Source of the DNA: Haliotis cracherodii
Taxonomy: Eukaryota
Direction: 5' to 3'
Assembly: GCF_022045235.1 (NCBI RefSeq)
Contig: NW_027266267.1
Coordinates: 14,942,001 to 15,006,000 of the forward strand
DNA length: 64,000 nucleotides
Part shown: positions 27,881 through 63,230 of the stretch, piece after piece
Layout: the number at the start of each line of letters is the position of its first letter
How positions within the stretch are numbered: the stretch's first letter is position 1
The notes under the pieces: model-generated
What the model was told of the DNA's origin: nothing
The model's database searches: none
What the model saw: the letters and a program-made list of their open reading frames with translations, nothing else
Position numbers and translations under genes: made by a program

Positions 27881-30800
27881 TATTTTACCTTATCCTGACT
27901 CCTACTAATTGCCTATCTCTCTCTATTTCCGAAAGGTAGTAAAAACTTCCTGAACTGTGCTCCCGGAGAACAAACACAGCTCATTCGAACACACCTATGT
28001 CCTGCGTATCTGCACCAGAAACATGTGATGAAGTTGGTATACTTTTTACTCCCAATCATTTTCACGCCAACTGAGTGGTCAGGGAAAATCTCCTGAGCTT
28101 TGTAATCCAAGCCGTTCTATCAAAATGAACCCTTTTCATGAAAAGAATTCGGCTCGGATTACATTCTTCTAGCCTTTTTTCATCATATGTAATGTTGTTT
28201 TTAAATTTTTACTTAAAATGTTACTTCTGTTTTCACTATGAAATCATGTATTGTATGTAGTGTGCATGTTTGAGATCGAAATCCTCACCCCATTTGCTTG
28301 TCCTTTGTCCCTCAATGCTGCACAACAGAGGATAGATGTAGTTTCTGTGTCCCTTTGGGGGGAGAAGAATTTTCACAGCACCTGTTTGCAGTACAGATGA
28401 AGGAGAAGGACTGTAGGATGAGGGAATCATCTAGTTCTATATCATCTTCATCAGAGATTACTTCAGTGAAGAAGAAGAGGATGACACTACTCCTACACTT
28501 TCTTCAGAGGAAGACAGGGATCTGACAGTTTCTTCCCTGGGCAGCAGAAGTCTTGACAACCTTCTCAAGGACTCAACTAAATTAAAGAAGAAGTCAACTG
28601 CTGTTCTGCTGAGCCTAAGAAAAATCTTCAATCCCTGGCAAGGAGGAAGAGTTCTTCTGCTACATCAAAGTTGTCTCCAGCCAAGAAAGAACATGTCTAC
28701 GCTGATGTGATCACCACCATGAAGCCATTTGCTATATCATTGGTGAAGGGGTCTACAATGTTGTAATCAAAGACACAAAAAGAAGGATAGCTGCACACAG
28801 CCGACCACTTCAATGCTGCTTCAGACAGTAGTTTCACCACTATTATCAGAAGCAGTCACACTTGTTTGACCAGTCCTTCTTGCAGCCGCACACCTTCACA
28901 CAGGCGTCAGCTTTTACTCAGCCCCAGACCGTCACACAGCTTCAGGGGTTCACGCAGAAGCCAACCTCCTCGCAACCCCAGATGTTCACACAGCAGCCAA
29001 CCTACACACAGCCTCAAGGGTTCGTGCAGCTTCCAATGTTCACACAGCCTACATCATTACAACAAGGTGCAATACCAGCTATTACTACAAGCTCAGACTT
29101 AGTAGAAAGCATTACCCAGCAATTTTTACTTGCTATGCAGCAGCACCAGACGACTCAACACATCATACCCTGTCAACGTCTTTCTCTAAGGATATGTGGC
29201 AGACTTCACGCCGTTCGTCCACAAGTCCGAAACCCTATCGCCTTGTTCCTTTCACAGGAAGAGGATGTGTTCGAGCCTACTGTTGAAGAGACATCAACCC
29301 GATTGGAAGATATCCTTCCATCTATGACGATTATGAACTACTAACCTGGATCGTCCTGTAATGGCCCCATCACTACATTCTCAAGAGACTGTTCCCCCTC
29401 TGATACTTCCTGTATGGAAGGGGAGACATCAACATTTTGACTATTCCAAAATCAGAACTCAAGCACTGCCAACACCGGGGTTTAACCCCAAGAAATGGCA
29501 TTGCCACGGCATGACGCCCTTCCTCCGGGCTTCGAAAGTAGTACGCTCTTATGTGAAGACATTAAGAATAGAGGGGAAGACAAGAAGTTGGCACAATTGG
29601 CACAATTAGATCAGACTACTAGATGTTCCTTCTTCGGCCTAATGATGTCACATTTTATCAACGAGGCGATGTTAAACGATCTCAAGAATCCACTCACTGA
29701 CAGAAATATTGTTCTTGTCAGCAGTGGTTGGTCAAAGGAAGACTTTATAAGTTACATGTCAGCAGGACTTACACTTTGATATCTACATTGGTGGACAATC
29801 AAGTGGAATGTCTGAGGTGGAACCTTTTTGAACGAGCTGGAATACACCAAGCATCTTTTCATGGACGCATCCCTTCAAGGATGGTGCGCTCACTTCAATT
29901 CAGATGTAGCATAGGGTCATCAGAAGAAAAGCTTCGCCACATCAATCATCTAGACTTTGGGGCAGTCATCCGAACTATAGCTCATTGGGCCCCACAGCTG
30001 AAGAACACATTCTTAATTATAAAAACAGACAACTCAACTGTGGCGTTCTACATAAATCTCCAAGGAACGATAAGATCTGCCACCCTTCTGACATTAACAT
30101 TTCAACTGTACAATCTCACAGACAGCCTCAACTTAAGGATAAAGGCAAGATACATCCAGGAGTATCAAGCATACTAGCGGACGCCCTATCAAGATCATCC
30201 AAGCCATCACAAGCAGAATGGATGTTACATGCAGAAGCATTCTGATTGGTGACAAGGAAAGGAGGTTGCCCATCAGGGGATCTCTTTGCAACCAGATTCT
30301 ATAGGCAGATAACAATCTTCATTTTACCAGTAGCGGACCCTCAAGCTTGGGCATTCGACACGCAATATGTTTGAAGGGACTACACCAGCACTGATGCCTC
30401 TGATATTACAGAAGATCACTCACACCAAGAATCCATTACTGCTTTTGATCGCGCCTTATTGGCCAGCCAGAACCTGGTTACCAGAGCTGGAGCTGACTTT
30501 GAACATGTGACTAAAAAGACCCTATTCCTTCTGGCACTAGCCATGGCAGCCAGAATGTCTGAGATACATGCAATCGACTTCAGTCGTACCAGATTTGACA
30601 GCGGTGAACATGCATCATCCCCTCTCAGCTTGAGATGGGATTTCATCGCAAAGAATCAGTTGCCTGGACAACGTGATAGACAGTTGATGTCCCAGGGCAG
30701 AAGACCCTGAAGACTTGCCCTTGTGCCCAGTTGGAGCATTACACATCTGTCTTCATCCTGTAATCAGGGAATGCTACTTCAGAAGTCTCCAGAACAACGG

Positions 30801-31460
30801 TCTCCTTCTGAACGAAAACACTTATGCTCAGAGCATACAGGGCATCAGGGTGAGACACACCCTATAGCATCCAACCCACATGAGGTCAGAGCTATAGCTT
30901 CTACACTGACCCATCATGGATACTGCTCTATCCCGACTATTGTGAAGGTTTGTTTCTGGAGATCCAACATCGTCTTCGCGAATCATTATCTCAGATATAT
31001 CGCCACAGAAGATGTAGCTGGCATCCATCAAATTGAACCTTAGTAGCTACACAGCAACTGACAGTGCCTACTAGAAGATAGACTAACTACACTCACCCAG
31101 GATCACAGAGACTTGTTGATGTCAGGTGGCTGCCCCATAACCACTGACCGAGAGTCCATGCTCCCCTGTTTTACTTTCATGATTATACTAAGTGTGGGAC
31201 CTTCTCTTAACATTATAATCATTTCAAGTAAGCTGTAAAATATTTTCTATGCACACTTTATCAAATCCATCGACTCAAAGAGGAGGTGGTACCCCACAGA
31301 GATTTAAGAAAAACAAGAAGTTTGTAACATTCTCATGAGGTTGTATGAACAGATTTGAATCATGCCTACAGATGGATTCTAGCAATAAGTATGAGTCAGG
31401 ATAAGGTAAAATATGTAATTTTTAGAGTAAAAATATCATTTATACTTATCCTTAAACATA
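27881..31460 (+). mobile_element. Decayed DIRS-type tyrosine-recombinase retrotransposon in RBM42 intron 3
   Basis: RNase H 'HINHL...TDNSTVAFYINLQG...HPGVSSILADALSR'; 'EWML...DLFAT'; YR 'KTLFLLALAMAARMSEIHAI...HEVRAIAS...FWRSNIVFANHYLR'. Complementary terminal blocks 27881-27912 and 31382-31413. RT core appears deleted. Confidence 0.88.
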
Positions 31461-33274
31461 CCCTATAGTGCTCATCGTTTTGATGTGGATACCTCCGCCT
31501 GTGCACATATGCACCACATGCATCTCCATAAAAAAAAGTTTTCAGAGTAAATTCTTAAATACGAGAAAGCCATGTTTTAGGAAGGGGCACCCTGGAAATG
31601 TGAAATTTTTAAGTTACAGGAAATGTATGTTTATATGTAATTTAATCAGCCATGTTTAAACTGGCTTCTTTTGTCATTCTTACACTTGTAAGTTTTGGCC
31701 TTCTTACATGAATAGCATATGTATTGTTAAATGTAGGAAAAAGGTTGATTGCTCAAACTTTTAGTGAAAATCTTAACTATCATCATGTATGTGATCCAAG
31801 ACGATTTTTTACACATGCTTATACTTTGTGATGTTATATGTGACATCACGTTCATATGGACTAGAACCAAATACCAAGACCTCTCTCTACTTGTCCCTAA
31901 AACATAAAGTACACTCTCATTGTCGATTTCTATAATGTTTTCTGCGCAAAATGTGTAGCCACATATATTTTGAAAATTGTAGCAAATGCAATTCTGCTTG
32001 GTGTAGCCTATATTTGAGAAGGAAGAACTTTGCTATGAATGTTAGCTTCCTCAGTGATGCAGCCGTCAAGTCATCTGTTTCAACCAGAGGTGCTTGATAC
32101 TTCAGGGATATGCTATGGTCTCTCTGTTTTGGAGTCCAGGTGCTTCTCAGTTATGTAAACTTATAGAATCCAAGGCATGAACAGGCTGGTCTGATGGCCC
32201 GAGCGGCTTGAGCGTAAACAAAGTTCTGTTCAAGTTCAGTTCATCCTACATTCAAATTCACCCCAGCCAGAGTTCCAGTATGTGCATTATTTCATCACAG
32301 TGTTGGAATAACATTTCATGAAAATCTGTTTCTGTTTTAAAGTCTGAAATAAAATGGAATCACTTTGGCTAGATAATGCTTGTGTCAATCCATCAGTTTC
32401 TGACTAGGATGGCAGGAGACTTGTTTTCATATTACACAGCTGCCATGATCGAATAAGGAATGTCTGTCAGGCTAATTAGGTGAAGCTATCATATACATCT
32501 GGTATGTAACTGGAACTTTTGTTTATTTCATTTCATTTTCATGATCATCTGTGTTTCTGATTACTGTCCCATGTGTATGGTATAGGTGGTTTAGTTCTCC
32601 TGCTATGGTCTACTGGTCGAGGCTTCAACTTCCAGATTCACCCTATAATCATGTTTGGGCAGTCAGTGGGTGACCTGTGCCTCTTGTCTTCCCCAAAGTG
32701 GAATTGTCACTGACTTGTGCCACTGTTGCCGGCTTCATTGTTACCATTTCCGATGCAGAACGGTGTCAAGTGTTTTCAGTGTTTCTAACTGCTGGTGACT
32801 ATCAGTGGTAAAATAGAACTAGATGCTGTGAGTCCCTGGGACTGACTAAAGTATAGCAATTAGATAAGTGATGACTGGTAAAAGGTCATCTAAGTAGTGG
32901 TTTCACCGATTTTCATCACTTTATGAAGACCTGCTAAAATGCTGTTATTTGGTCCAAAGTCTGAAGTAATTATCAGTAAAAATGACCAAATGTGGAATTA
33001 TCAGTGAAAATTCCCAAGTTGGATAAGACTTTCCCAATTCAGGTCCATATATTATTCATTTTAGTTCTTCTCAGAAAAGAAATGTCAGATAAACATTAGT
33101 TACACAGCTAGATATATGTATCTTCTTATTAGAACAGAACTATATATTTAGTTGTGACTAATGTTTATCTGACATTTCTGTTCTGAGAAGAAAAGAAATC
33201 AATGTTAGAACTGTCCATGTCAGATTTTCTTCTCTCAGTCACCAAGTTCCCCAATGAAATTCCATAACCATGTG

Positions 33275-33625
33275 GACGGCCTCCGTGGTCTAGAGGTAGA
33301 GCATCCGCCCGGAGACGGCCTCCGTGGTGTAGTGGTAGAGCATCCGCCCGGAGACAGCCTCTGTGGTCTAGAGGTAGAGCGTATGCCCAGAGACCGCCTC
33401 CGTGATGTAGTGGTAGAGCATCCGCCCTTAGACGGCCTCCGTGGTGTAGTGGTAGAGCATCCACCATGAGACGGCCTCTGTGGTCCAGAGGTAGAGCGTC
33501 CGCCCGGAGACTGTCTCCATTGTCTATTGGTAGAGCGTCCATCTGCAGACCGCCTCTGTGGTCTAGAGGTAGAGCGTCCACCTGGAGACTGCCTCTGTGG
33601 TCTAGTGGTAGATCGTCCACCGGGA
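33275..33625 (+). repeat. Nine tandem 39-bp copies of the SINE-A tRNA-like 5' half
   Basis: Unit GACGGCCTCYGTGGTCTAGWGGTAGAGCRTCCGCCCGGA x9, continuing directly into the SINE-A body. Confidence 0.9.
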
Positions 33626-33899
33626 CCAAAAGAGGTTAAAAGATGGTACTTGTTGTTACCCTGTCTGACGCCCGGCATTAAGGAAATAAGACAAGGACTG
33701 GTCTGCTCGGAGTCAGTTTACTTTGTCTGAGTAGGGTATTCATGTTAAACTGAGACATGGTGTTTCAGTGGGCTAGCACTATAAAATTGGCATTTGTGCG
33801 GACTAGTACAAGCAGCCACACACGCATACTTAGTGCATGAACATCACTATATGAGAGAAATAATCTTGAACGCGACGTTAAACCCAATTTCACCTCACC
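33587..33899 (+). mobile_element. tRNA-derived SINE family A (B-box segment deleted)
   Basis: Body matches the reverse complement of 7230-7554 and 35149-35375. Confidence 0.85.
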
Positions 33900-33977
33900 C
33901 CATAACCATGCCTATACACATAAGGCATCAGACATATTTGTTGCTAGAACAGTGGCACCCTGGAACCCAGTTTGGAT

Positions 33978-34158
33978 GCCTAGGACCCCCATAATATCTA
34001 GGACCCCCAAAATGCCTCGGACCCTCAAAATGCCTCGGACCCTCAAAATGCCTTGGACCCCCAAAATGCTTAGGACCCTCAAAATGTCAAGGACCCTCAA
34101 AATGCCTCGGACCCCTAAAATGCCTAGGACCCCCAAAATGCCTCGGACCCCCAAAATG
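33978..34158. repeat. 18-bp minisatellite (~10 copies)
   Basis: Unit AAAATGCCTCGGACCCYC. Confidence 0.9.
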
Positions 34159-34301
34159 TATTAGCAAGAGTCCCCAGGATGATCCAATATATAGACCATG
34201 GTAAACCGCTCATATCTTAACAGTATTTCAGTCATTTTGCTCTTAAAGTAATCCAGTCTTTGGAGAACCTGGTTTTCATGATGAGTTCTTTGTTTTTTCA
34301 G

Positions 34302-34496
34302 ATGACTTCCGAATGTTTTGTGGTGATCTAGGGAATGAAGTGACAGACGAACATTTGGCCCGTGCCTTCTCCAAGTATCCCACATTTGTGAAGGCCAAAG
34401 TTGTTCGAGATCGTCGCAGCAACAAGACCAAAGGATATGGATTTGTCAGTTTCAAGGATCCCAATGATTTTGCCAGGGCAATGAGAGAGATGAATG
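34302..34496 (+). CDS. RBM42: RBM42 coding exon 4 (RRM)
   Basis: DDFRMFCGDLGNEVTDEHLARAFSKYPTFVKAKVVRDRRSNKTKGYGFVSFKDPNDFARAMREMN with RNP2/RNP1; acceptor ttttttcag|, donor G|GTAAGT. Confidence 0.96.
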
Positions 34497-35148
34497 GTAA
34501 GTGTGATGTTGTGTTTTTCTATGTTTGTTTACCTTGAATCACTACACATAATATATGGTTTATCTTTATATGCTTGCTCGAAATGACAGGTGAGAATTGG
34601 AAATTGAGTGGCCGCAGCATCCTTGCTTGTCCTTTTTGTGATAAATACCCAGGATCCATTCTCAAGAATAGCCTGGGTTGAGTCTGAATCAAATGTCACA
34701 ATGCTCAAAAGAGCTGTCAAATTACACTCATGTCATATATGTATTAGAGAAACTTTGTGTGGAATTACTGATCCTCGAGATGGGATGGTGGCATCCCTTC
34801 CAAAACGAAACTATTGATAATCAATAGCATGAAGATATACCCTCATTGTCAGATGACGCTATTCCCAGGATAACATCAGGTTGATGCAGTGTTGAGATTT
34901 AACATAAATGTCAAGGAGTACTTGTCGTAACCCTTGCGTTAAAAGTTCAAAGTTTAAGGAGTCACCAGATAAATTTACCATACAAGCCAACCACGAGGAC
35001 CCTGGGACCTCCTTGATGCTCAAACCCTCAATGTTGTGGATCATTCACTGGATTACCTCCTTCAGACTTGATAATTTACAGGCTGTGGTGATATGGCTGG
35101 AATAGTGTTGAGTGCAGCTGTAAGCAACACTCACTCACTCCACCGGAA

Positions 35149-35492: not shown

Positions 35493-35834
35493 AGTCCATC
35501 AACATGATCAAGGTGGACTGAGTGATGTGATTACTGTACCTGACAGTGATGAGGAACATTTCCACCAGGGTACACCAGCTTCCCTGGTCCTGGCTGTCAT
35601 GTAGTTTGCATGCCATGTGTATACTCTTGGCCACTCACAAACCAATGTCATTACCTTGGAACCCTTTCTGTGTGCCCTGGTAACAGTTGTCCCGAGGAAT
35701 AGAAGGAATAACAGCTGAGAAGAATATGTTCCCACAATGAAAAACTAAGGCGTCACATCATACAGATTATTTATTGTCCGATGTGAGTTTACAGATACAG
35801 TGGTCATATGTGTTACATTGAGAAGCAGGCCGGC

Positions 35835-36030
35835 AGGCAGACAGACATGATGTACAGAGACATGACGGTGTAAGGCAGGAGACACATCGAGGGGCTGTAG
35901 AGTATGTGGGTGCCCACGCCAGGAAGGCTGGACTGTGACTGACTGTCTACAGTGCTGGTACAACCTGCAGGTGCTACCTGTGGTGGCCTCACCTGGGGAG
36001 GTAGGTGTGGGCGTTACCGTCACCGCTGCA
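35835..36030 (-). pseudogene. Degenerate same-orientation relic of the nested gene's coding exons A and B
   Basis: Plus-strand CTGCAGGTGCTACCTGTGGTGGCCTCACCTG..GAGGTAGG (~35964-36005) resembles 38843-38885. TGTAAGGCAGGAG and GCCAGGAAGGCTGGAC resemble exon B; residual 'PSW' and 'LLPY' lie in different frames. Confidence 0.6.
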
Positions 36031-36640
36031 CAGAACCAGGTGGAATCGGTCAGTGGATCAATGCGTGAGACAGTGGTTAACTTACAGGTTATCTTGACAG
36101 TGTAGAAGAGGACCATCTATCTTACATGAGCAGTTTTTCCTAGCAGTATGAAATGAAGTACACAGATTTACAATTATATCCTTATGTTCAATAACTGATA
36201 GACTTCTGATATCAGGTTTCATAAAGAACACTACACCAACATACAGAGAAATACTCATGTTTTGTTTCGTTTTGAACTGATATCTCGGTTCACATTATAC
36301 ACTGGTGCACATGTTAGAATCATTCTGAATACAAACAAAACTTGAAGTAAATGTGGTTTTCTAGGGAAAAGTTCAAATTTAGCCATAGCGATTTTGGTGA
36401 ATTAATGAACACTTCCTAAGGGTCAACTTCACATGACTTCATTCCATCATGTTGTCAACAGCAACAGAGACATCTGTGTGTTACTGAATGCTGAGAGATT
36501 GCCCAAGGAAGAGCCTTGATCCAGGAGTGTGGGGTGAAACGGGGTGATACTATATATAGGTCGAGTTGGAGGGACGGCAGGGTGTCTCATGTGACTGTCT
36601 CCACTGTGAGCGGTGTGTGTCTCGACACTTGTTGCCATGG

Positions 36641-36756
36641 TTACTGTGTCCCTGCATTTCGCTTCTGTTTGCTGGCCCTGACACTGGCGGACCGGCCAAA
36701 CTGCTGTTTGAAGGCCAGGTACTCGTCAGGGAAGTAGTGTCGCACCCACACATTGT
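36641..36756 (-). CDS. Nested neuropeptide-like precursor, last coding exon (C)
   Basis: Acceptor tatctatctccgcag|AC continues phase 1: NNVWVRHYFPDEYLAFKQQFGRSASVRASKQKRNAGTQ*; first canonical AATAAA downstream at 35775-35770. Confidence 0.65.
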
Positions 36757-37396
36757 CTGCGGAGATAGATACAAGTTAAACTTGAAAAGGAGGGATACTT
36801 TTGAGTAGTTTAGTAAGTCAGTGGGTCTCTATTCTGTGGCAGATTGTCTTAGGTTTGGAAGAATATATTATGATTGTTCTATGCTGCAGGAGATGTCATC
36901 ATGTGGATATCATGTCATCAACAATTGATGCTTTCTGTTTTATTGTGGTCCCTCCTTGCGCCCCGCTTCATTACCTGAACACTGATACAGAGAATGATAT
37001 GAAGATGCTCTTCACTTCTTTTACTATGCTCTTGAAATGAAATGTATTTTTACCAACATGGTTATTCTTTACAAACAGTGCTATGCGGAAATTCGGATTT
37101 CAGTAAGGAAGAGCAAATGCTAATATTAGATTCTATTCAACACTTTATATTAAAAACTGGCAGATTTTCAGTTAAATGATTGTTTAAAATAAACTTAAAA
37201 TGGATGTATTATATGTACACATCTAGCTTGGCATGTACAATTTATTTGTAACATGTAACCTTCATTGATGTATTCATTGTAATATGTCCTATGTGTAATG
37301 GAACGTATTAACATAAGCGCTTCGCTTGTTCACCAATCCATTTCACACTCTGGTGAAAATAAATATGTTTAAACCAGAATGATACATTATGACAAA

Positions 37397-38208
37397 CATG
37401 TATAGAGTATGGTATCTGTGTTGTACATGGGTATACTCACTGTTGGCAGACATGTATAGAGTGTGGTGTCTGTGTTGTACATGGGTATACTGACTGTTGG
37501 CAGACATGTATAGAGTATGGTGTCTGTGTTGTACATGGTTATACTCACTGTTGGCAGACATGTATAGAGTATGGTGTCTGTGTTGTACATGGGTATACTC
37601 ACTGTTGGCAGACATGTATAGAGTATGGTGTCTGTGTTGTACATGGGTATACTCACTGTTGGCAGACATGTATAGAGTATGGTGTCTGTGTTGTACATGG
37701 GTATACTGACTGTTGGCAGACATGTATAGAGTATGGTGTCTGTGTTGTACATGGGTGTACTCACTGTTGGCAGACATGTATAGAGTATGGTGTCTGTGTT
37801 GTACATGGGTATTCTGACTGTTGGCAGACATGTTTAGAGTATGGTGTCTGTGTTGTACATGGGTGTACTCACTGTTGGCAGACATGTATAGAGTATGGTG
37901 TCTGTGTTGTACATGGGTGTACTCACTGTTGGCAGACATGTATAGAGTATGATGTCTGTGTTGTACATGGGTATACTCACTGTTGGCAGACATGTATAGA
38001 GTATGATGTCTGTGTTGTACATGGATGTACTGACTGTTGGCAGACATGTATAGAGTATGGTGTCTGTGTTGTACATGGTTATACTGACTGTTGGCAGACA
38101 TGTATAGAGTATGGTGTCTGTGTTGTACATGGGTATACTGACTGTTGGCAGACATGTATAGAGTATGGTGTCTGTGTTGTACATGGGTATACTCACTGTT
38201 GGCAGACA
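37397..38208. repeat. 54-bp minisatellite, 15 copies, derived from the nested gene's exon-B/intron junction
   Basis: Minus-strand unit TCTGCCAACAGTGAGTATACCCATGTACAACACAGACACCATACTCTATACATG; the terminal unit overlaps the exon-B donor. Confidence 0.95.
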
Positions 38209-38298
38209 GCATGTAAGGGAGGAGGATGCGCCTCAGGTAGGGGTCGGAGTGCCAGCTGGCTGGACCCCAGCGTTTACCTATAGCACCCCAGGACCGAC
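38197..38298 (-). CDS. Nested neuropeptide-like precursor, coding exon B
   Basis: Acceptor ggtgttgcag|GT; 102 nt, phase 1-1: (G)RSWGAIGKRWGPASWHSDPYLRRILLPYMLSAN; donor ACA|GTGAGT. Contains the GKR amidation/cleavage signal. Confidence 0.78.
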
Positions 38299-38689
38299 CT
38301 GCAACACCAGTAGACTGATGACAAGGCTGCAATACTCCCATCAGTCTTTATGTTCTATAATCAGATAACTTTAGCCCACATTGTGCAAGTAAAAATGCAT
38401 TACCCTTTACATGTATTTTGATCACAGCTGAAACTGAAATAGTTGAAACAGACATAAAATATTCTCAAAAATACTTTACAAAAAGAAAATAGGTTCATGT
38501 TGCTTAATCCTCAGTTTATCCAGGGATTCCATGACTTCATGCCTTTTGTACAATGAATGAAAATAGCTCTGAATACTCTGAATTGCACAATTACTATGAT
38601 TGTACATCTGTGGTAAAAGAAGTGGATGCATCAAATGCAACATCAGTTCACACCACTCTACATTAGTTGAAGCACTATCTCTGATATCG

Positions 38690-38797
38690 GTCGCCATGAT
38701 ATTGCTGGAATATTGCTAAAATGGTTTAAAACCTCACGCACCCACCCTCACACTCACTCACTCACTCACTCACTCACTCACTCACTCACTCACTCAC
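38690..38797 (+). mobile_element. SINE family C 3' fragment with expanded (CACT)n tail
   Basis: GATATTGCTGGAATATTGCTAAAA motif shared with 43801-43972. Confidence 0.75.
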
Positions 38798-38867
38798 TCT
38801 GTGGGCTGGTAACACTGTCCGAGTGCTAGTACTACTGCAGAGCTGCAGGTGTACCGTGTGGCCTCAC

Positions 38868-39108
38868 CTGATGTAAAGAGGTAGGGCATGCTGTAGCTGA
38901 GCTTCTGTCCCTCCTCCCCCTTCTCCCCACTGTCGCTAGCGTCGCTGGTGTCCTCGTCCACCGCCTGGCTGTAGTCCATGTTGGTGCACCCCGCACCCCA
39001 CCCACTGCAGCGGAAGAAACTCTGGCGTGCAGTGCGGGGAAAACCCACGCACAGTGACAACACACAGCACGCTACTGTCACCACAAACAAGTTCAAGGTC
39101 ACGCTCAT
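38868..39108 (-). CDS. Nested neuropeptide-like precursor, first coding exon (A)
   Basis: Acceptor tatctcttcag|G-ATG; signal peptide MSVTLNLFVVTVACCVLSLCVG, then RTAR-QSFFRCSGWGAGC, an acidic spacer and LSYSMPYLFTS; strong phase-1 donor CAG|GTGAGG. Confidence 0.82.
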
Positions 39109-40301
39109 CCTGAAGAGATAGAAGCAGAAGAGAACATGACAGTTGTGGTCATTCCTGATCTGTGGGGGATCTGTGTGTTTGATGCCATGGCTGTTACTAT
39201 GTGGGTTTGATGCCATGGCTGTTACTATGTGGGTTTGATGCCATGGCTGGTACTATAAGGCCTTTGACACGGCATTATTGTTTTACTGATCTGCAGAGAG
39301 GCCATGCTTATCCTTCAGAACATTTAAAACCTATGTTAAGGTGTGCTAATTTCCATAGGTCGTACCTCAGGTCTGACTAGAAACTACAGTTAGCTAAACA
39401 TGTACTCCGTCTTCCACAACGTTACTGATACAAAATTTACATATTCTATCTTGAAGTTGAATCTTTGGGCGTAGAAATCTACCTAGTTTTATTTCGATTG
39501 GCAGAGTGCCACCATGAAACTTTCACTCATAATGCTACACTGAGATCTACTGTGACAAAACTAACATATGATTCAACAGTCAGTATTTCTTTTGACAATC
39601 TATTTGTACGTAATATATTGCCATTTGCTTGGCCATTGTTGTTCCAAAGATTAGTAAACCAGACATAATAATCTAAGGAAAGATAGCACTTATAGTTATA
39701 GCATGTTTAAATTCCTGAAAAGGAAAAATACAAATCAAAAACTGATAATTGAGGCCTGCTGGGCAAGGCAAACACTTCATTACTCCAGGACTTAGGGAAA
39801 TTAATGGACTGTCTGCAAATAGCGCTTAGCATTCTTGATTAATCAGCAGCATAAAGTCTGCACCAACAACGTAATATAATTTAATTGGTTTATGAAGATA
39901 ACCACCCATTTCATATTAACAGCTAAGTTTGGGGTTTAATTGCCAACTGCTAAGAAACGCCTACATGCTCGGTTTTGGACAATACGGCTGAATTCCCTTG
40001 TACCCCAAATAGCTGATCAATAAAATCAGATAGGGTCGACTAGATTTTCATACAAAGTTTTTTATACAATACAAGCAAAACCATCGACTGATTTGAATTT
40101 ACGTATCAAAATACTAGCGCTCTATTTGCAGACTTAGATATTTCTTTAATGGTGAAATTCAAATCGAGATTTTCATGTAACCAGATGCCCAATTATCTAT
40201 GTATACTTTCAACCTGATGACCTGTGACAAACCTTTGTAGTTTTAAGAGATTTGACAAATGAAGGGATTAAGGGAAGTATACCTATCTTGTTTCGTGTTC
40301 A

Positions 40302-40413
40302 GGCAGAAGACCCGTCTTCGATTCCCAACATAAGTACAATGTGTGAAGCACATTTCCGGTGTACCCAGACGTAATATTGCTAAAGGCGGCGTAATACCAA
40401 ACTCACTCACTCA
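40302..40413 (+). mobile_element. SINE family C, 5'-truncated
   Basis: Shared body and (CACT)n tail; CTATCTTGTTTC direct repeat on both sides. Confidence 0.75.
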
Positions 40414-40974
40414 CTATCTTGTTTCATGAATACAATAAATGATTATTTGCTGTTTGCTAGACACACCAATTACACAAATGTAGCTGGGTTAAAGCAGGGG
40501 GTCCAGTCTGTAGTGTTCTTTTTTTGTCATACATTTAAACAACTGATAGGCCATTTGAAAATAAGTAATTCACACAGCCAGTATTTGAATCATGAGTACA
40601 GCATTGTTTCCAAACAATTACATAAAGTATTACTGACCCTTCAGAAACAACAGAATGCAGTGATTTATCTAGTATTTTTAACTTTGTTCCCGTCACAGGT
40701 ATATTTGAAAAGAAATTCTTGAATTGTCCAAATTTGGGGATTCCTACATTCAGAGTTATTCTAACTTTGCATTCAATGCAAAAAGTCCCATGGGCAGAGG
40801 TATAAAGTACTGAGTTTCAACATTTGATAACTGGGACATCTTGAGGTCTGATTTTTGATTTCTTACCAACATTTGCTGCAGACCTGGAGCTGAGGCTTGG
40901 CCTCTGATACATGCCAAGATACACTCGGGGGTTGGGGGGGCTCATTGAAACAGTCAAGTGGGCGACAGGCAGAG

Positions 40975-41650
40975 GATATGTGATTGTATATAGGAGGAAT
41001 GTGACTGTATATCAGAGGAATGTGATTGTATATAGGAGGAATGTGACTGTATATCAGAGGAATGTGATTGTATATAGGAGGAATGTGACTGTATATCAGA
41101 GGAATGTGACTATATCGGAGGAATGTGACTATATATAGGAGGAATGTGACTGTATATCAGAGGAATGTGATTGTATATAGGAGGAATGTGACTGTATATA
41201 GGAGGAATGTGATTGTATATAGGAGGAATGTGACTGTATATCAGAGGAATGTGATTGTATATAGGAGGAATGTGACTGTATATCGGAGGAATGTGATTGT
41301 ATATAGGAGGAATGTGACTGTATATAGGAGGAATGTGACTGTATATAGGAGGAATGTGACTGTATATCAGAGGAATGTGATTGTATATAGGAGGAATGTG
41401 ACTGTATATCGGAGGAATGTGACTATATAGGAGGAATGTGACTGTATATCGGAGGAATGTGACTGTATATCGGAGGAATGTGATTGTATATGGGAGGAAT
41501 GTGACTATATCGGAGGAATGTGATTGTATATCAGAGGAATGTGACTGTATATCGGAGGAATGTGACTATATAGGAGGAATGTGACTGTATATCAGAGGAA
41601 TGTGACAGTATATCAGAGGAATGTGATTGTATATCGGAGGAATGTGACTG
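40975..41650. repeat. ~21-bp minisatellite (~32 copies)
   Basis: Unit AGGAATGTGAYTGTATATMRG. Confidence 0.95.
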
Positions 41651-42399
41651 TAATACTTGAGAGATTGGTTTTCTGGGCGGTGCCAGAGAACCCTGATGAT
41701 GGGTTTCAGTGAAATGTGTGTCCTTCCTGTTGTCTGGGCTATGATGGCAAGAGTCAAGACATCAGTGCACATACTGCATGACTCCTTGTCAGGCAGGCTG
41801 GGTGTGGTGCAACATGCAACGTTTATATACACTGGGAAATCAATTTGTAATTTGTTCTTTTTACGTAATATAAGGAGACATGTCAATACTCTTTGTTTAG
41901 GTAACACAGACTGATTTGACAAAACAAGACTGATAATAGATTTCAATGAAACCTCCAACTGTGTTATTATCATCAGTTCGTAGTCGGCTCTAGTAGCATG
42001 TCCCGGAATGTTTTACACTACACACCCTTGTCTTGTGTGTTGAAAGACAGGTGAATGTGTGACATCTTGTTGCAGCACACAATTCTTCTTGCATATCAAG
42101 TAGTTCAAGTATTTCCATTGTTTTCACTGATTACCATCTGAAAGCTCCATAATAGTGATAAATGGTGGAATAATTAAGGTGATTTCACTTGTCAATCAGT
42201 AAACACGTCATTAATTCTTATTTCAGGTTTTCTGTATTTCTGTGGGGGGCACGGGTTGCCCAGTCGAGGGAACACTGTACTTAAGAATTACATCCTGTAT
42301 TGTAGCATATCGATAAATAGGCCCACGTTTATCGTGTATTGTATCGTGGGTCAAATATCACGATGCATTGGAATATCAGTGTATCGTTTCAACCTTAGT

Positions 42400-63117: not shown

Positions 63118-63230
63118 GGAAGTATGTGGGGAATCGGCCCATCAAGCTGAGGAAGAGCTCATGGAAGGACAGACAGATCGATGTTGTGAGGAAGAAGGAC
63201 AAGGAGAAGAAGAGGTTAGGACTCAGATGA
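63118..63230 (+). CDS. RBM42: RBM42 coding exon 5 (end of RRM; total CDS 1176 nt, 391 aa)
   Basis: Acceptor gttcttgtag|GG; GKYVGNRPIKLRKSSWKDRQIDVVRKKDKEKKRLGLR* is the characteristic RBM42 C-terminus. Confidence 0.96.

What the first reader, a model, noticed from the sequence alone, without database searches (positions are those of the whole stretch)
36641..39108. Hidden antisense neuropeptide-like precursor gene nested in RBM42 intron 4
Seen: three minus-strand exons (39108-38868, 38298-38197, 36756-36641) with canonical GT-AG sites, all phase 1, join into one 152-aa ORF: MSVTLNLFVVTVACCVLSLCVG-FPRTAR-QSFFRCSGWGAGCTNMDYSQAVDEDTSDASDSGEKGEEGQK-LSYSMPYLFTSGRSWGAI-GKR-WGPASWHSDPYL-RR-ILLPYMLSANNNVWVRHYFPDEYLAFKQQFGRSASVRASKQ-KR-NAGTQ. 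Established: a signal peptide, an RxxR site followed by Gln (possible pyroGlu), a two-Cys loop, an acidic spacer, Gly-Lys-Arg (amidation plus convertase cleavage) and further dibasic sites are hallmarks of peptide-hormone precursors. The key amidated peptide (...YSMPYLFTSGRSWGAI-NH2) only appears across the splice junction, so the ORF track misses it. A WG motif recurs three times (GWGAG, SWGAI, WGPA). Inference: I cannot match it to a named molluscan neuropeptide family. I recall uncharacterised arthropod precursors with paired GWG motifs but cannot verify this, so it may be an undescribed protostome peptide signalling system.
Basis: partly seen in the sequence, partly recalled or inferred. 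Interest (0 to 1): 0.85.

Follow-up and report, generated by a model that had tools for sequence, protein, structure and literature searches.

The report
Unnamed mollusc peptide-hormone-like precursor gene
A small three-exon gene inside the last intron of the abalone RBM42 gene is real, spliced and transcribed. It encodes a secreted precursor with the hallmarks of a neuropeptide or hormone precursor, and it belongs to an unnamed family found in snails, limpets and scallops whose function is untested.

Summary
The three minus-strand exons (39108-38868, 38298-38197, 36756-36641) have GT-AG borders and phase-1 junctions. Both junctions occur in assembled contigs of four public runs from four studies.

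Each exon is 100% identical to RefSeq XP_071095052.1, a 152-aa "uncharacterized protein" of Haliotis cracherodii. The gene is therefore already annotated but has no name.

Relatives, all labelled "uncharacterized" or "hypothetical" and without Pfam hits, occur in:
- three Haliotis species;
- Gigantopelta, Patella, Littorina, Nucella and Babylonia;
- two scallops.

No arthropod or annelid relative was found.

The conserved parts are:
- a hydrophobic leader;
- an invariant Arg-Gln;
- an invariant ring C-x-GWGAG-C;
- LFTSG-x-SW-x-x-[I/N] followed by Gly-Lys-Arg.

The spacer between the ring and LFTSG varies from 31 to 108 residues and from net charge -7 to +14. AlphaFold finds no globular fold.

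The best reading is a preprohormone giving a pyroGlu, disulfide-ringed peptide and an amidated peptide. Processing, tissue of expression and receptor are all inferred.

The motifs are absent from the searchable literature and from the supplements of six lophotrochozoan (mostly mollusc) neuropeptide surveys. The family does not meet the defining features of excitatory peptide (EP)/CCHamide or of GnRH/corazonin-type peptides.

Interest is moderate: a candidate new mollusc peptide family.

The parts
38868..39112 (-). Exon carrying the start codon. The ATG is at 39108-39106 and the coding part is 39108-38868 (residues 1-80 plus the first base of Gly81). An acceptor AG at 39111-39110 joins it to an unlocated 5' UTR exon.
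   Evidence: 100% identical to P0014 residues 1-80. In one search the contigs align to 39112 and then carry 47-150 further letters that lie nowhere in 39113-41999.
39043..39108 (-). Predicted signal peptide, residues 1-22 (MSVTLNLFVVTVACCVLSLCVG). The cleavage point was placed by eye only.
   Evidence: the best 12-residue hydrophobic core has mean Kyte-Doolittle 2.7, and a comparable core is present in all 12 family members. AF2 helix at residues 2-21. SignalP was not available.
38971..39036 (-). Processing site R25-T-A-R28, followed by conserved block 1 (Q29-Y46, QSFFRCSGWGAGCTNMDY). It carries a putative pyroGlu and a Cys34-Cys41 ring.
   Evidence: R28, Q29, F32, C34, G36-G40, C41 and Y46 are invariant in 12/12 sequences; exactly two Cys follow the leader in all full-length members.
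38299..38867 (-). Intron 1 (569 nt, GT...AG, phase 1). It contains a (CTCA)n microsatellite and a piece of a high-copy repeat.
38197..38298 (-). Exon 2 (residues 81-115 in part). It encodes the end of block 2 (G-R-S-W-G-A-I), then G88-K89-R90 (amidation and cleavage signal), then WGPASWHSDPYL, RR, and ILLPYMLSAN.
   Evidence: 100% identical to P0014 residues 82-114; joints occur on both sides. L77-G81 and S83 are invariant, and G88 and R90 are present in all full-length members.
36757..38196 (-). Intron 2 (1440 nt, GT...AG, phase 1). It includes a 54-bp x 15 tandem array (37396-38208) that starts in the last bases of exon 2 and copies the splice donor.
   Evidence: 14 donor-like sites, each a multiple of 54 nt downstream of the donor used.
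35750..36756 (-). Last exon. The coding part is 36756-36641 (residues 115-152, stop TAA at 36643-36641). The 3' UTR is about 870 nt, with AATAAA at 35775-35770. The exact 3' end was not determined.
   Evidence: 100% identical to P0014 residues 116-152. X5 record 15 and X11 record 8 run past 36000 by 58 and 225 letters. for the poly(A) signal.
34303..34496 (+). Context: the RRM exon of the host gene RBM42. It ends in phase 1 with donor GT at 34497.
   Evidence: E 1.9e-29 to human RBM42 residues 383-445 (PDB 6qw6_R). for the sequence.
63118..63229 (+). Context: the last coding exon of RBM42 (G-KYVGNRPIKLRKSSWKDRQIDVVRKKDKEKKRLGLR-stop). The 28.6-kb intron 34497-63117 contains the nested gene.

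Best explanation
This is a single-copy, transcribed, three-coding-exon gene of black abalone. It lies antisense inside the last intron of RBM42 and encodes a 152-aa secreted prepropeptide of an unnamed mollusc family.

Proposed mechanism (inferred):
1. The leader is removed in the ER.
2. A furin or prohormone convertase cuts after R25-T-A-R28. Other members have RR or KR at this position.
3. The exposed Gln29 cyclises to pyroGlu, and Cys34-Cys41 close an eight-residue ring (C-S-G-W-G-A-G-C).
4. Cleavage at Gly88-Lys89-Arg90, followed by amidation, yields a peptide ending ...YLFTSGRSWGAI-NH2.
5. Abalone has no dibasic site between the two blocks. They are therefore either separated at a monobasic site (Lys69) or released together as one 59-residue pGlu...Ile-NH2 peptide.
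6. RR103-104 and KR146-147 release further C-terminal peptides.
7. The products most likely act as neuro- or endocrine signals on an unidentified receptor.

Shown here: transcription, splicing, the coding frame, protein-level conservation, and the pattern in which the motifs are conserved.

Inferred: secretion, every processing step, the tissue of expression, and signalling.
For: Splicing and copy number.
- Spliced contigs occur in four runs from four studies.
- The locus is unique in the genome.

Sequence constraint.
- The three differences seen inside the 459-nt coding sequence among those runs are all synonymous third-position changes.
- At least 15 differences were seen in about 640 nt of 3' UTR.
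- All three exons are identical to a 152-aa RefSeq model.

Family.
- Orthologues occur in four gastropod lineages and in two scallops.

Conservation pattern typical of prohormones.
- R28, Q29, the GWGAGC ring and LFTSG.S are invariant.
- GKR is present in every full-length member.
- Exactly two Cys follow the leader.
- The spacer varies from 31 to 108 residues and from net charge -7 to +14.
- Scallops and neogastropods carry RxxR or RxR just before the second block.

Other support.
- AF2 gives a leader helix, then disorder over residues 23-94, with pTM 0.30.
- The nearest protein-language-model clusters are all neuropeptide precursors: CAPA, NPVF, DH31-type, NPS, PBAN, galanin and CCAP. Scores are at most 0.90, so this is a lead only.
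Against: - There are no data on tissue of expression. The runs are coded, without library descriptions, and are only guessed to be RNA.
- No peptide has been detected and no receptor is known.
- The abalone leader lacks a positively charged N-region, and no SignalP or NeuroPred run was possible.
- Abalone has no dibasic site between the two conserved blocks, so the identity of the mature products is uncertain.
- The C-terminal third (residues 100-149) is predicted helical with pLDDT about 70-80 and is conserved from abalone to scallops. It could have a role other than as a spacer.
- The family was not picked up by six lophotrochozoan (mostly mollusc) neuropeptidome surveys. This could mean low expression in ganglia or expression outside the nervous system.
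Confidence: 0.7

Rival explanations
1. It is a secreted peptide or small protein with a role outside neuronal or endocrine signalling, such as defence (antimicrobial), mucus or biomineralisation. It would be processed at the same basic sites but would not act as a hormone.
For: - The tissue of expression is unknown.
- The family is absent from ganglion-based neuropeptide catalogues of abalone, Reishia, scallop and oyster.
- The same genome holds other amidated secreted-peptide precursors that were read as defence peptides.
Against: - Near-invariance of two short blocks from abalone to scallops, alongside free drift of the spacer, is typical of receptor ligands. Defence peptides usually evolve fast.
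- The gene is single-copy, whereas defence families are usually multicopy.
- The conserved blocks are neither cationic nor amphipathic.
Confidence: 0.15
2. It is a strongly diverged paralogue of a known family. One candidate is excitatory peptide (EP)/CCHamide (GGNamide), given the ring C-S-G-W...C and the caenogastropod ending W-G-A-N-NH2. The other is the GnRH/corazonin/AKH superfamily, given pQ-S-F-...-G-W at positions 1-3 and 8-9.
For: - The resemblance is by eye only, to apEP KCHGRWAIHACFGGN-NH2 and to the described GGN/GAH-amide endings (PMC12969411; PMC6617912).
- The six-residue spacing between the Cys equals what I recall for arthropod CCHamide. That figure is from memory and was not checked.
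Against: - The defining features are not met. The ring has 6 residues between the Cys, against 8 in lophotrochozoan EP.
- No amidated G-G/A-N directly follows the second Cys. The amidated end lies 45-120 residues away.
- That amidated end reads WSVI in Patella and WNPI in scallops.
- The peptide does not follow the leader directly.
- No search linked the family to either known family.
Confidence: 0.1
3. It is a non-coding antisense transcript of the RBM42 intron whose open reading frame is a chance feature.
For: Antisense intronic transcripts are common, and contigs cannot show the strand.
Against: - The GT-AG sites fit only the minus strand.
- The frame is kept through two phase-1 junctions.
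- The protein is conserved in scallops at E about 1e-11 and in other gastropods at E down to 1e-67.
- All coding differences among the runs are synonymous.
Confidence: 0.02

Closest known systems
RefSeq/GenBank 'uncharacterized' proteins: XP_071095052.1 (H. cracherodii), XP_046548250.1 (H. rubra), XP_067675436.1 (H. asinina), XP_041372446.1 (Gigantopelta aegis), KAK6173759.1 (Patella caerulea), XP_070183098.1 (Littorina saxatilis), KAL8598371.1 (Nucella lapillus), LOC143277673 (Babylonia areolata), LOC117341295 (Pecten maximus), LOC132565111 (Ylistrum balloti)
   Same: They belong to the same family. The first is identical to this gene's product exon by exon.
   Different: None carries a name, a domain or a described function.
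Excitatory peptide (EP) / CCHamide (GGNG, GGNamide) precursors
   Same: - A small precursor with one two-Cys ring containing an aromatic residue near the N-terminus.
- An amidation signal GKR.
- The caenogastropod ending WGAN-NH2 recalls the described GGN-NH2 ending.
   Different: - The ring has 6 residues between the Cys, not 8.
- The ring is not followed by G-G/A-N-amide.
- The ring and the amidated end are separated by a 31-108 residue spacer.
- The peptide is preceded by a pro-piece and a dibasic site instead of following the leader directly.
GnRH / corazonin / AKH-type precursors
   Same: An N-terminal Gln (putative pyroGlu), an aromatic residue at position 3 and G-W at positions 8-9 of block 1. 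The comparison with corazonin and mollusc GnRH is from memory.
   Different: - The peptide is not directly after the leader.
- There is no Gly-basic amidation site after residues 10-12.
- A disulfide ring is present, which those peptides lack.
- The scallop version has a different register.
Calcitonin / adrenomedullin-type hormones
   Same: If it is not cut internally, the 59-residue product would have an N-terminal disulfide ring and a C-terminal amide, like that superfamily.
   Different: - The ring size and ring residues differ.
- The middle part varies from 31 to 108 residues and changes charge.
- There was no Pfam or PDB sequence match.

Membership tests
Generic neuropeptide / peptide-hormone precursor (a class, not a family) | N-terminal signal peptide | tested here: inconclusive
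   All 12 members have a hydrophobic core with mean Kyte-Doolittle 2.1-3.4 over 12 residues. AF2 gives a helix at residues 2-21. No SignalP run was possible, and the abalone N-region is uncharged.
Generic neuropeptide / peptide-hormone precursor (a class, not a family) | Conserved basic cleavage sites flanking short conserved blocks, with variable spacers | tested here: met
   R28 is invariant before Q29. GKR is present in all full-length members. The spacer is 31-108 residues with net charge -7 to +14.
Generic neuropeptide / peptide-hormone precursor (a class, not a family) | Amidation signal (Gly before the basic pair) | tested here: met
   G88-K89-R90 is conserved in Haliotis, Gigantopelta, Patella, Littorina, Nucella, Babylonia, Pecten and Ylistrum.
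Generic neuropeptide / peptide-hormone precursor (a class, not a family) | No globular fold | tested here: met
   AF2 on alignment A3: mean pLDDT 58.7, pTM 0.30, and residues 23-94 below 50.
Generic neuropeptide / peptide-hormone precursor (a class, not a family) | Expression in neurons or endocrine cells, mature peptides detected, and a receptor | not testable with these tools
   Run metadata are coded and carry no tissue. No peptidomics data were available.
Excitatory peptide (EP) / CCHamide | Two Cys with eight residues between them in lophotrochozoans (PMC12969411) | tested here: not met
   There are six residues between Cys34 and Cys41 in all 12 members.
Excitatory peptide (EP) / CCHamide | An amidated G-G/A-N (or H) C-terminus directly after the second Cys (PMC6617912, PMC12969411) | tested here: not met
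   The second Cys is followed by T/S-N-x-D-Y and a long spacer. The amidated end is WGAI, WGAN, WSVI or WNPI.
Excitatory peptide (EP) / CCHamide | A single peptide directly after the signal peptide | tested here: not met
   A pro-piece ending in RxxR, RR or KR precedes Gln29.
GnRH / corazonin / AKH | A pGlu peptide of 8-12 residues directly after the leader, followed by a Gly-basic amidation site | tested here: not met
   Block 1 is preceded by a dibasic site and is not followed by a Gly-basic pair. The family definition is from established knowledge and was not re-read here.
Any Pfam family | A score above the gathering threshold | tested here: not met
   P0001, P0002 and P0014 gave no family at E <= 10. 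Among the 12 members scanned, the only hit was one chance match at E 0.34.

The most novel reading that the evidence does not exclude
The gene represents a previously unnamed peptide-signalling family that is at least as old as the gastropod-bivalve ancestor. Its products would be a pyroGlu, disulfide-ringed 'GWGAGC' peptide and an amidated 'LFTSGxSW..I/N-NH2' peptide, possibly remaining as one long ring-plus-amide hormone. They would act on a still-orphan mollusc receptor.
Probability: 0.5. Interest if true: 0.6.

Novelty: new member of a known kind. Interest (0 to 1): 0.45.

Why it matters
Mollusc neuropeptide catalogues are used to reconstruct how bilaterian peptide signalling evolved and to manage reproduction and growth in farmed abalone, oysters and scallops. 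They are also used to trace the origin of cone-snail toxins that mimic hormones.

This would add a ligand family to those catalogues. The family is well conserved, single-copy and has so far been overlooked, and several mollusc GPCRs still lack ligands.

It also shows that small genes nested antisense in introns can escape transcriptome-based peptide surveys even when genome pipelines model them. The practical value is a concrete pair of synthetic peptides to test. The find is an incremental addition to a known kind of system, not a new principle.

Tried and rejected
Steps left out or unavailable.
Each exon was searched by reference. Whole-protein work used the database protein P0014, which a tool returned.
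- SignalP and NeuroPred are not available. I used only a hydrophobicity heuristic.

Searches that found nothing.
- Pfam gave nothing useful.
- A PDB profile search gave only a chance 13-residue match to Rab8A at E 1.2.
- The motif strings (GWGAGC, QSFFRC, LFTSG, SWGAIGKR and others) are absent from 8.4 million full texts, apart from irrelevant hits.
- The same strings are absent from the held supplements of De Oliveira 2019, Kim 2019 (abalone ganglia), the Reishia 2023 paper, Zhang 2018 (scallop), the oyster 2021 paper and Thiel 2021. The Conus textile preprint has no supplements held.

Hits and ideas rejected.
- The bacterial hits (P0004-6, P0009, P0011) are repeat proteins matching only 'FRC..G..CT'. 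I rejected them as spurious.
- CCWamide was considered and rejected because it has eight Cys.

Not resolved.
- I could not locate the 5' UTR exon. It is not in 39113-41999, unless it is hidden under the high-copy repeat at 40200-40600.
- Earlier notes of this scan hold nothing at this locus.
Full report
**1. Observation**

On the minus strand the three stretches 39108-38868, 38298-38197 and 36756-36641 are open in the stated frame. Intron 1 is 569 nt (GTGAGG...TTGCAG). Intron 2 is 1440 nt (GTGAGT...CCGCAG). Both interrupt a codon after its first base. The stop is TAA at 36643-36641.

Each exon was searched by reference.

The in-frame pieces of the three exons are each 100% identical to residues 1-80, 82-114 and 116-152 of protein P0014. 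P0014 was returned by the database tools. It is RefSeq XP_071095052.1, "uncharacterized protein [Haliotis cracherodii]", 152 aa. The two missing residues, Gly81 and Asn115, are the split codons. The window is evidently black abalone, or something indistinguishable from it at this locus. Two earlier notes of this scan on other pieces of the genome also call it black abalone.

**2. Transcription and splicing**

The run search returned 17 small runs that hold 15-19% of the sampled words of the 2468-base stretch. That share is what the exons alone would give.

Contigs of four of these runs were laid on 36000-41999. The four runs carry four organism labels and come from four studies.

- X5 record 15 (1221 nt) covers 39112..38866, 38296..38197 and 36756..36000, and runs on past 36000.
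- X1 record 7 and X9 record 27 join exon 1 to exon 2.
- X11 record 8 joins exon 3 to exon 2 but then continues 108 nt into intron 1. This is retained intron or pre-mRNA.

The 2-nt offsets at the joints are the 'gt' that fits either side.

Exon 1 matches a single place in the 1.18-Gb assembly. There is no processed DNA copy, so the spliced contigs must derive from RNA. Contigs carry no strand, but the GT-AG pairs fit only the minus strand.

The contigs add two features to the gene.
- They carry 47-150 more letters upstream of an acceptor at about 39110 (tctcttCAG|G ATG). There is therefore at least one 5' non-coding exon, which I could not place. It is not in 39113-41999, unless it lies under the high-copy repeat at 40200-40600.
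- The 3' UTR runs about 870 nt to an AATAAA at 35775-35770.

Among the four runs, the only differences inside the 459 coding bases are at 39028, 38276 and 36659. All three are synonymous third-position changes: GCA>GCC, GGT>GGG and CGA>CGG. At least 15 differences are listed in about 640 nt of 3' UTR. The numbers are small, but they point to purifying selection on the protein.

**3. Context**

The + strand ORF at 34313-34537 matches human RBM42 residues 383-445 at E 1.9e-29. That exon is 34303-34496, with donor GT at 34497. The last RBM42 coding exon (G-KYVGNRPIKLRKSSWKDR...GLR-stop) is at 63118-63229.

The gene therefore lies antisense in the 28.6-kb last intron of RBM42.

**4. Relatives**

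Search with exon 1, scored within the stop-free ORF 38797-39216 so that full-length proteins were eligible:
- Haliotis asinina, 152 aa, 90% identity;
- Gigantopelta aegis, 148 aa, 52% identity.

Full phmmer search of 1.84 billion representatives with exon 1:
- Patella caerulea, Littorina saxatilis and Nucella lapillus;
- unnamed transcript-derived proteins;
- five bacterial repeat proteins that match only an "FRC..G..CT" string, which I discount.

Profile searches:
- Babylonia areolata;
- the scallops Pecten maximus and Ylistrum balloti, 132 aa, E about 1e-11.

Every named member is "uncharacterized" or "hypothetical". No arthropod, annelid, cephalopod, heterobranch or oyster member was found. 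For small intron-nested genes that absence is weak evidence.

**5. Anatomy of the family (alignment A3)**

Every member has these features in order.
- A hydrophobic leader.
- A short pro-piece ending in RxxR, RR or KR.
- An invariant Arg-Gln.
- Block 1: Q-x(3-5)-C-x-G-W-G-A-G-C-x-x-x-x-Y. There are exactly two Cys after the leader.
- A spacer of 31-108 residues. Its net charge runs from -7 (abalone, Gigantopelta) to +14 (Babylonia), and neogastropods have poly-Gly inserts.
- Block 2: Y-x-x-x-[YF]-L-F-T-S-G-x-S-W-x-x-[I/N], followed by Gly-Lys-Arg in every full-length member.

Abalone, Gigantopelta, Patella and scallops also share:
- a third block after GKR, [AS]-W-x-x-[DS]-(x)-P-Y-L;
- abalone, Gigantopelta and scallops (not clearly Patella) also share a fourth, V-[RQ]-x-x-[FY]-P-x-x-Y.

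Scallops and neogastropods have RxxR or RxR about five residues before "LFTSG". Abalone has only Lys69 there.

| Detail | Result |
|---|---|
| RxxR followed by Gln | The basic site and Gln are conserved |
| Cys loop | Invariant |
| GKR | Conserved |
| Acidic spacer | Lineage-specific |
| First WG motif | Invariant |
| Second WG motif | Only S-W is kept; it reads WSVI in Patella and WNPI in scallops |
| Third WG motif | Abalone and Gigantopelta only |
| KR146-147 | Abalone only |

**6. Fold and class**

AlphaFold2 on A3 gives mean pLDDT 58.7 and pTM 0.30. It predicts a leader helix at residues 2-21, disorder from 23 to 94, and helices over 100-149 at pLDDT about 70-80. There is no globular domain.

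The ESM Atlas feature search lists only neuropeptide precursor clusters as nearest neighbours: CAPA, NPVF, DH31-type, neuropeptide S, PBAN, FMRFamide-related, galanin and CCAP. The scores are 0.87-0.90, which the tool rates as leads only. This agrees at the level of class and does not place the protein in a family.

Pfam gave nothing useful. A PDB profile search gave nothing.

**7. Most likely mechanism**

This is a preprohormone. The proposed steps are:
1. The leader is removed.
2. A convertase cuts after R-T-A-R28.
3. Gln29 cyclises to pyroGlu.
4. Cys34-Cys41 form the ring.
5. Cleavage and amidation at G88-K89-R90 give ...YLFTSGRSWGAI-NH2.
6. RR103-104 and KR146-147 release C-terminal peptides.

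It is open whether abalone releases two peptides or one. One would be a 59-residue peptide with a ring at one end and an amide at the other.

The free variation of the spacer in length and charge, and the RxxR sites before block 2 in other lineages, favour two separate ligands.

All of these steps are inferred from sequence. Nothing here shows secretion, processing, neuronal expression or a receptor.

**8. Comparison with known families**

*Excitatory peptide (EP)/CCHamide.* The papers read here define this family by four features (PMC6617912; PMC12969411, apEP KCHGRWAIHACFGGN-NH2):
- two Cys, with eight residues between them in lophotrochozoans;
- an aromatic residue in the ring;
- G-G/A-N (or H)-amide directly after the second Cys;
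- a single peptide directly after the leader.

The present family shares the ring with an aromatic residue and, in caenogastropods, an ending W-G-A-N-NH2. It fails on ring size (6 residues), on the position of the amidated end (45-120 residues from the ring, and not conserved as WGA), and on the pro-piece before the peptide.

*GnRH/corazonin/AKH.* The resemblance of block 1 to these peptides (pGlu, aromatic residue at position 3, G-W at 8-9) is from memory. It also fails the defining layout of leader, peptide, then Gly-basic site.

*CCWamide.* This has eight Cys.

I therefore do not file the gene under any named family.

*Literature.* The motif strings do not occur in the searchable full texts. 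They also do not occur in the held supplements of six lophotrochozoan (mostly mollusc) neuropeptide surveys, including abalone ganglia and scallop. Non-open papers, such as the 2010 Lottia survey, could not be searched.

**9. Verdict**

It is a neuropeptide-like precursor of an unnamed family. It is not "hidden", since RefSeq models it. It is not shown to be protostome-wide or present in arthropods.

The novelty is a new family within a well-known kind of gene. Interest is moderate, and the main value is a testable pair of conserved candidate ligands for mollusc endocrinology.

Limits of this work:
- SignalP and NeuroPred were unavailable;
- run metadata are coded, so the tissue is unknown;
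- the only read-laying run used assembled contigs, which cannot give strand, transcript ends or expression levels.

Noticed in passing
window 37396-38208 (minus-strand intron 2, overlapping the last 12 nt of exon 2): A 54-bp x 15 tandem array (96% matches) starts inside the end of exon 2 and copies the splice donor. It holds 14 sites of the form CAACAGT[G/C]AGT. Each lies a multiple of 54 nt (18 codons) beyond the donor used, and the frame stays open through the array (a 332-aa ORF at 37343-38341). Use of a downstream copy would add in-frame 18-residue units (SEYTHVQHRHHTLYMSAN). Only low-depth unspliced contigs lie in the array (X9 record 26, X11 record 13), and no such isoform was seen.
   Followed up: partly
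window 38690-38722 and 40317-40415: Short pieces of a very high-copy transcribed repeat. Summed contig depth is 30,000-76,000 in all four runs, with many chimeric 'joints' between the two places. It is probably a SINE-like element present in both introns. It masks any search for the missing 5' exon at 40200-40600.
   Followed up: no
window 39172-39256 and 38733-38799: A 28-bp x 3 tandem repeat lies just upstream of the ATG exon. A (CTCA)n microsatellite of about 17 units lies in intron 1.
   Followed up: no
window 34303-34496 (+) and 63118-63229 (+): RBM42 RRM exon and last coding exon. The intron between them is 28.6 kb and carries the nested antisense gene plus several repeats.
   Followed up: yes
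window 29728-31043 (+): Overlapping ORFs with retroelement-like strings (for example ...KTDNSTVAFYINLQGT... and ...LADALSR...). They suggest a decayed retrotransposon fragment in an upstream RBM42 intron.
   Followed up: no
window 33165-34160 and 40911-41430: Two coding-looking minisatellites. All frames are open because of the short repeat units (LPLDHRGGL-type and RRNVTVYQRNVIVY-type). They are probably not genes.
   Followed up: no
P0013, P0010 and P0016 (caenogastropod transcript-derived proteins): These sequences diverge from their full-length relatives right after 'LFTSG.S'. That is at or next to the position of intron 1 in abalone (LFTS|G). It suggests retained-intron transcripts and a shared intron position in caenogastropods. 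This could not be checked without their genomic DNA.
   Followed up: no
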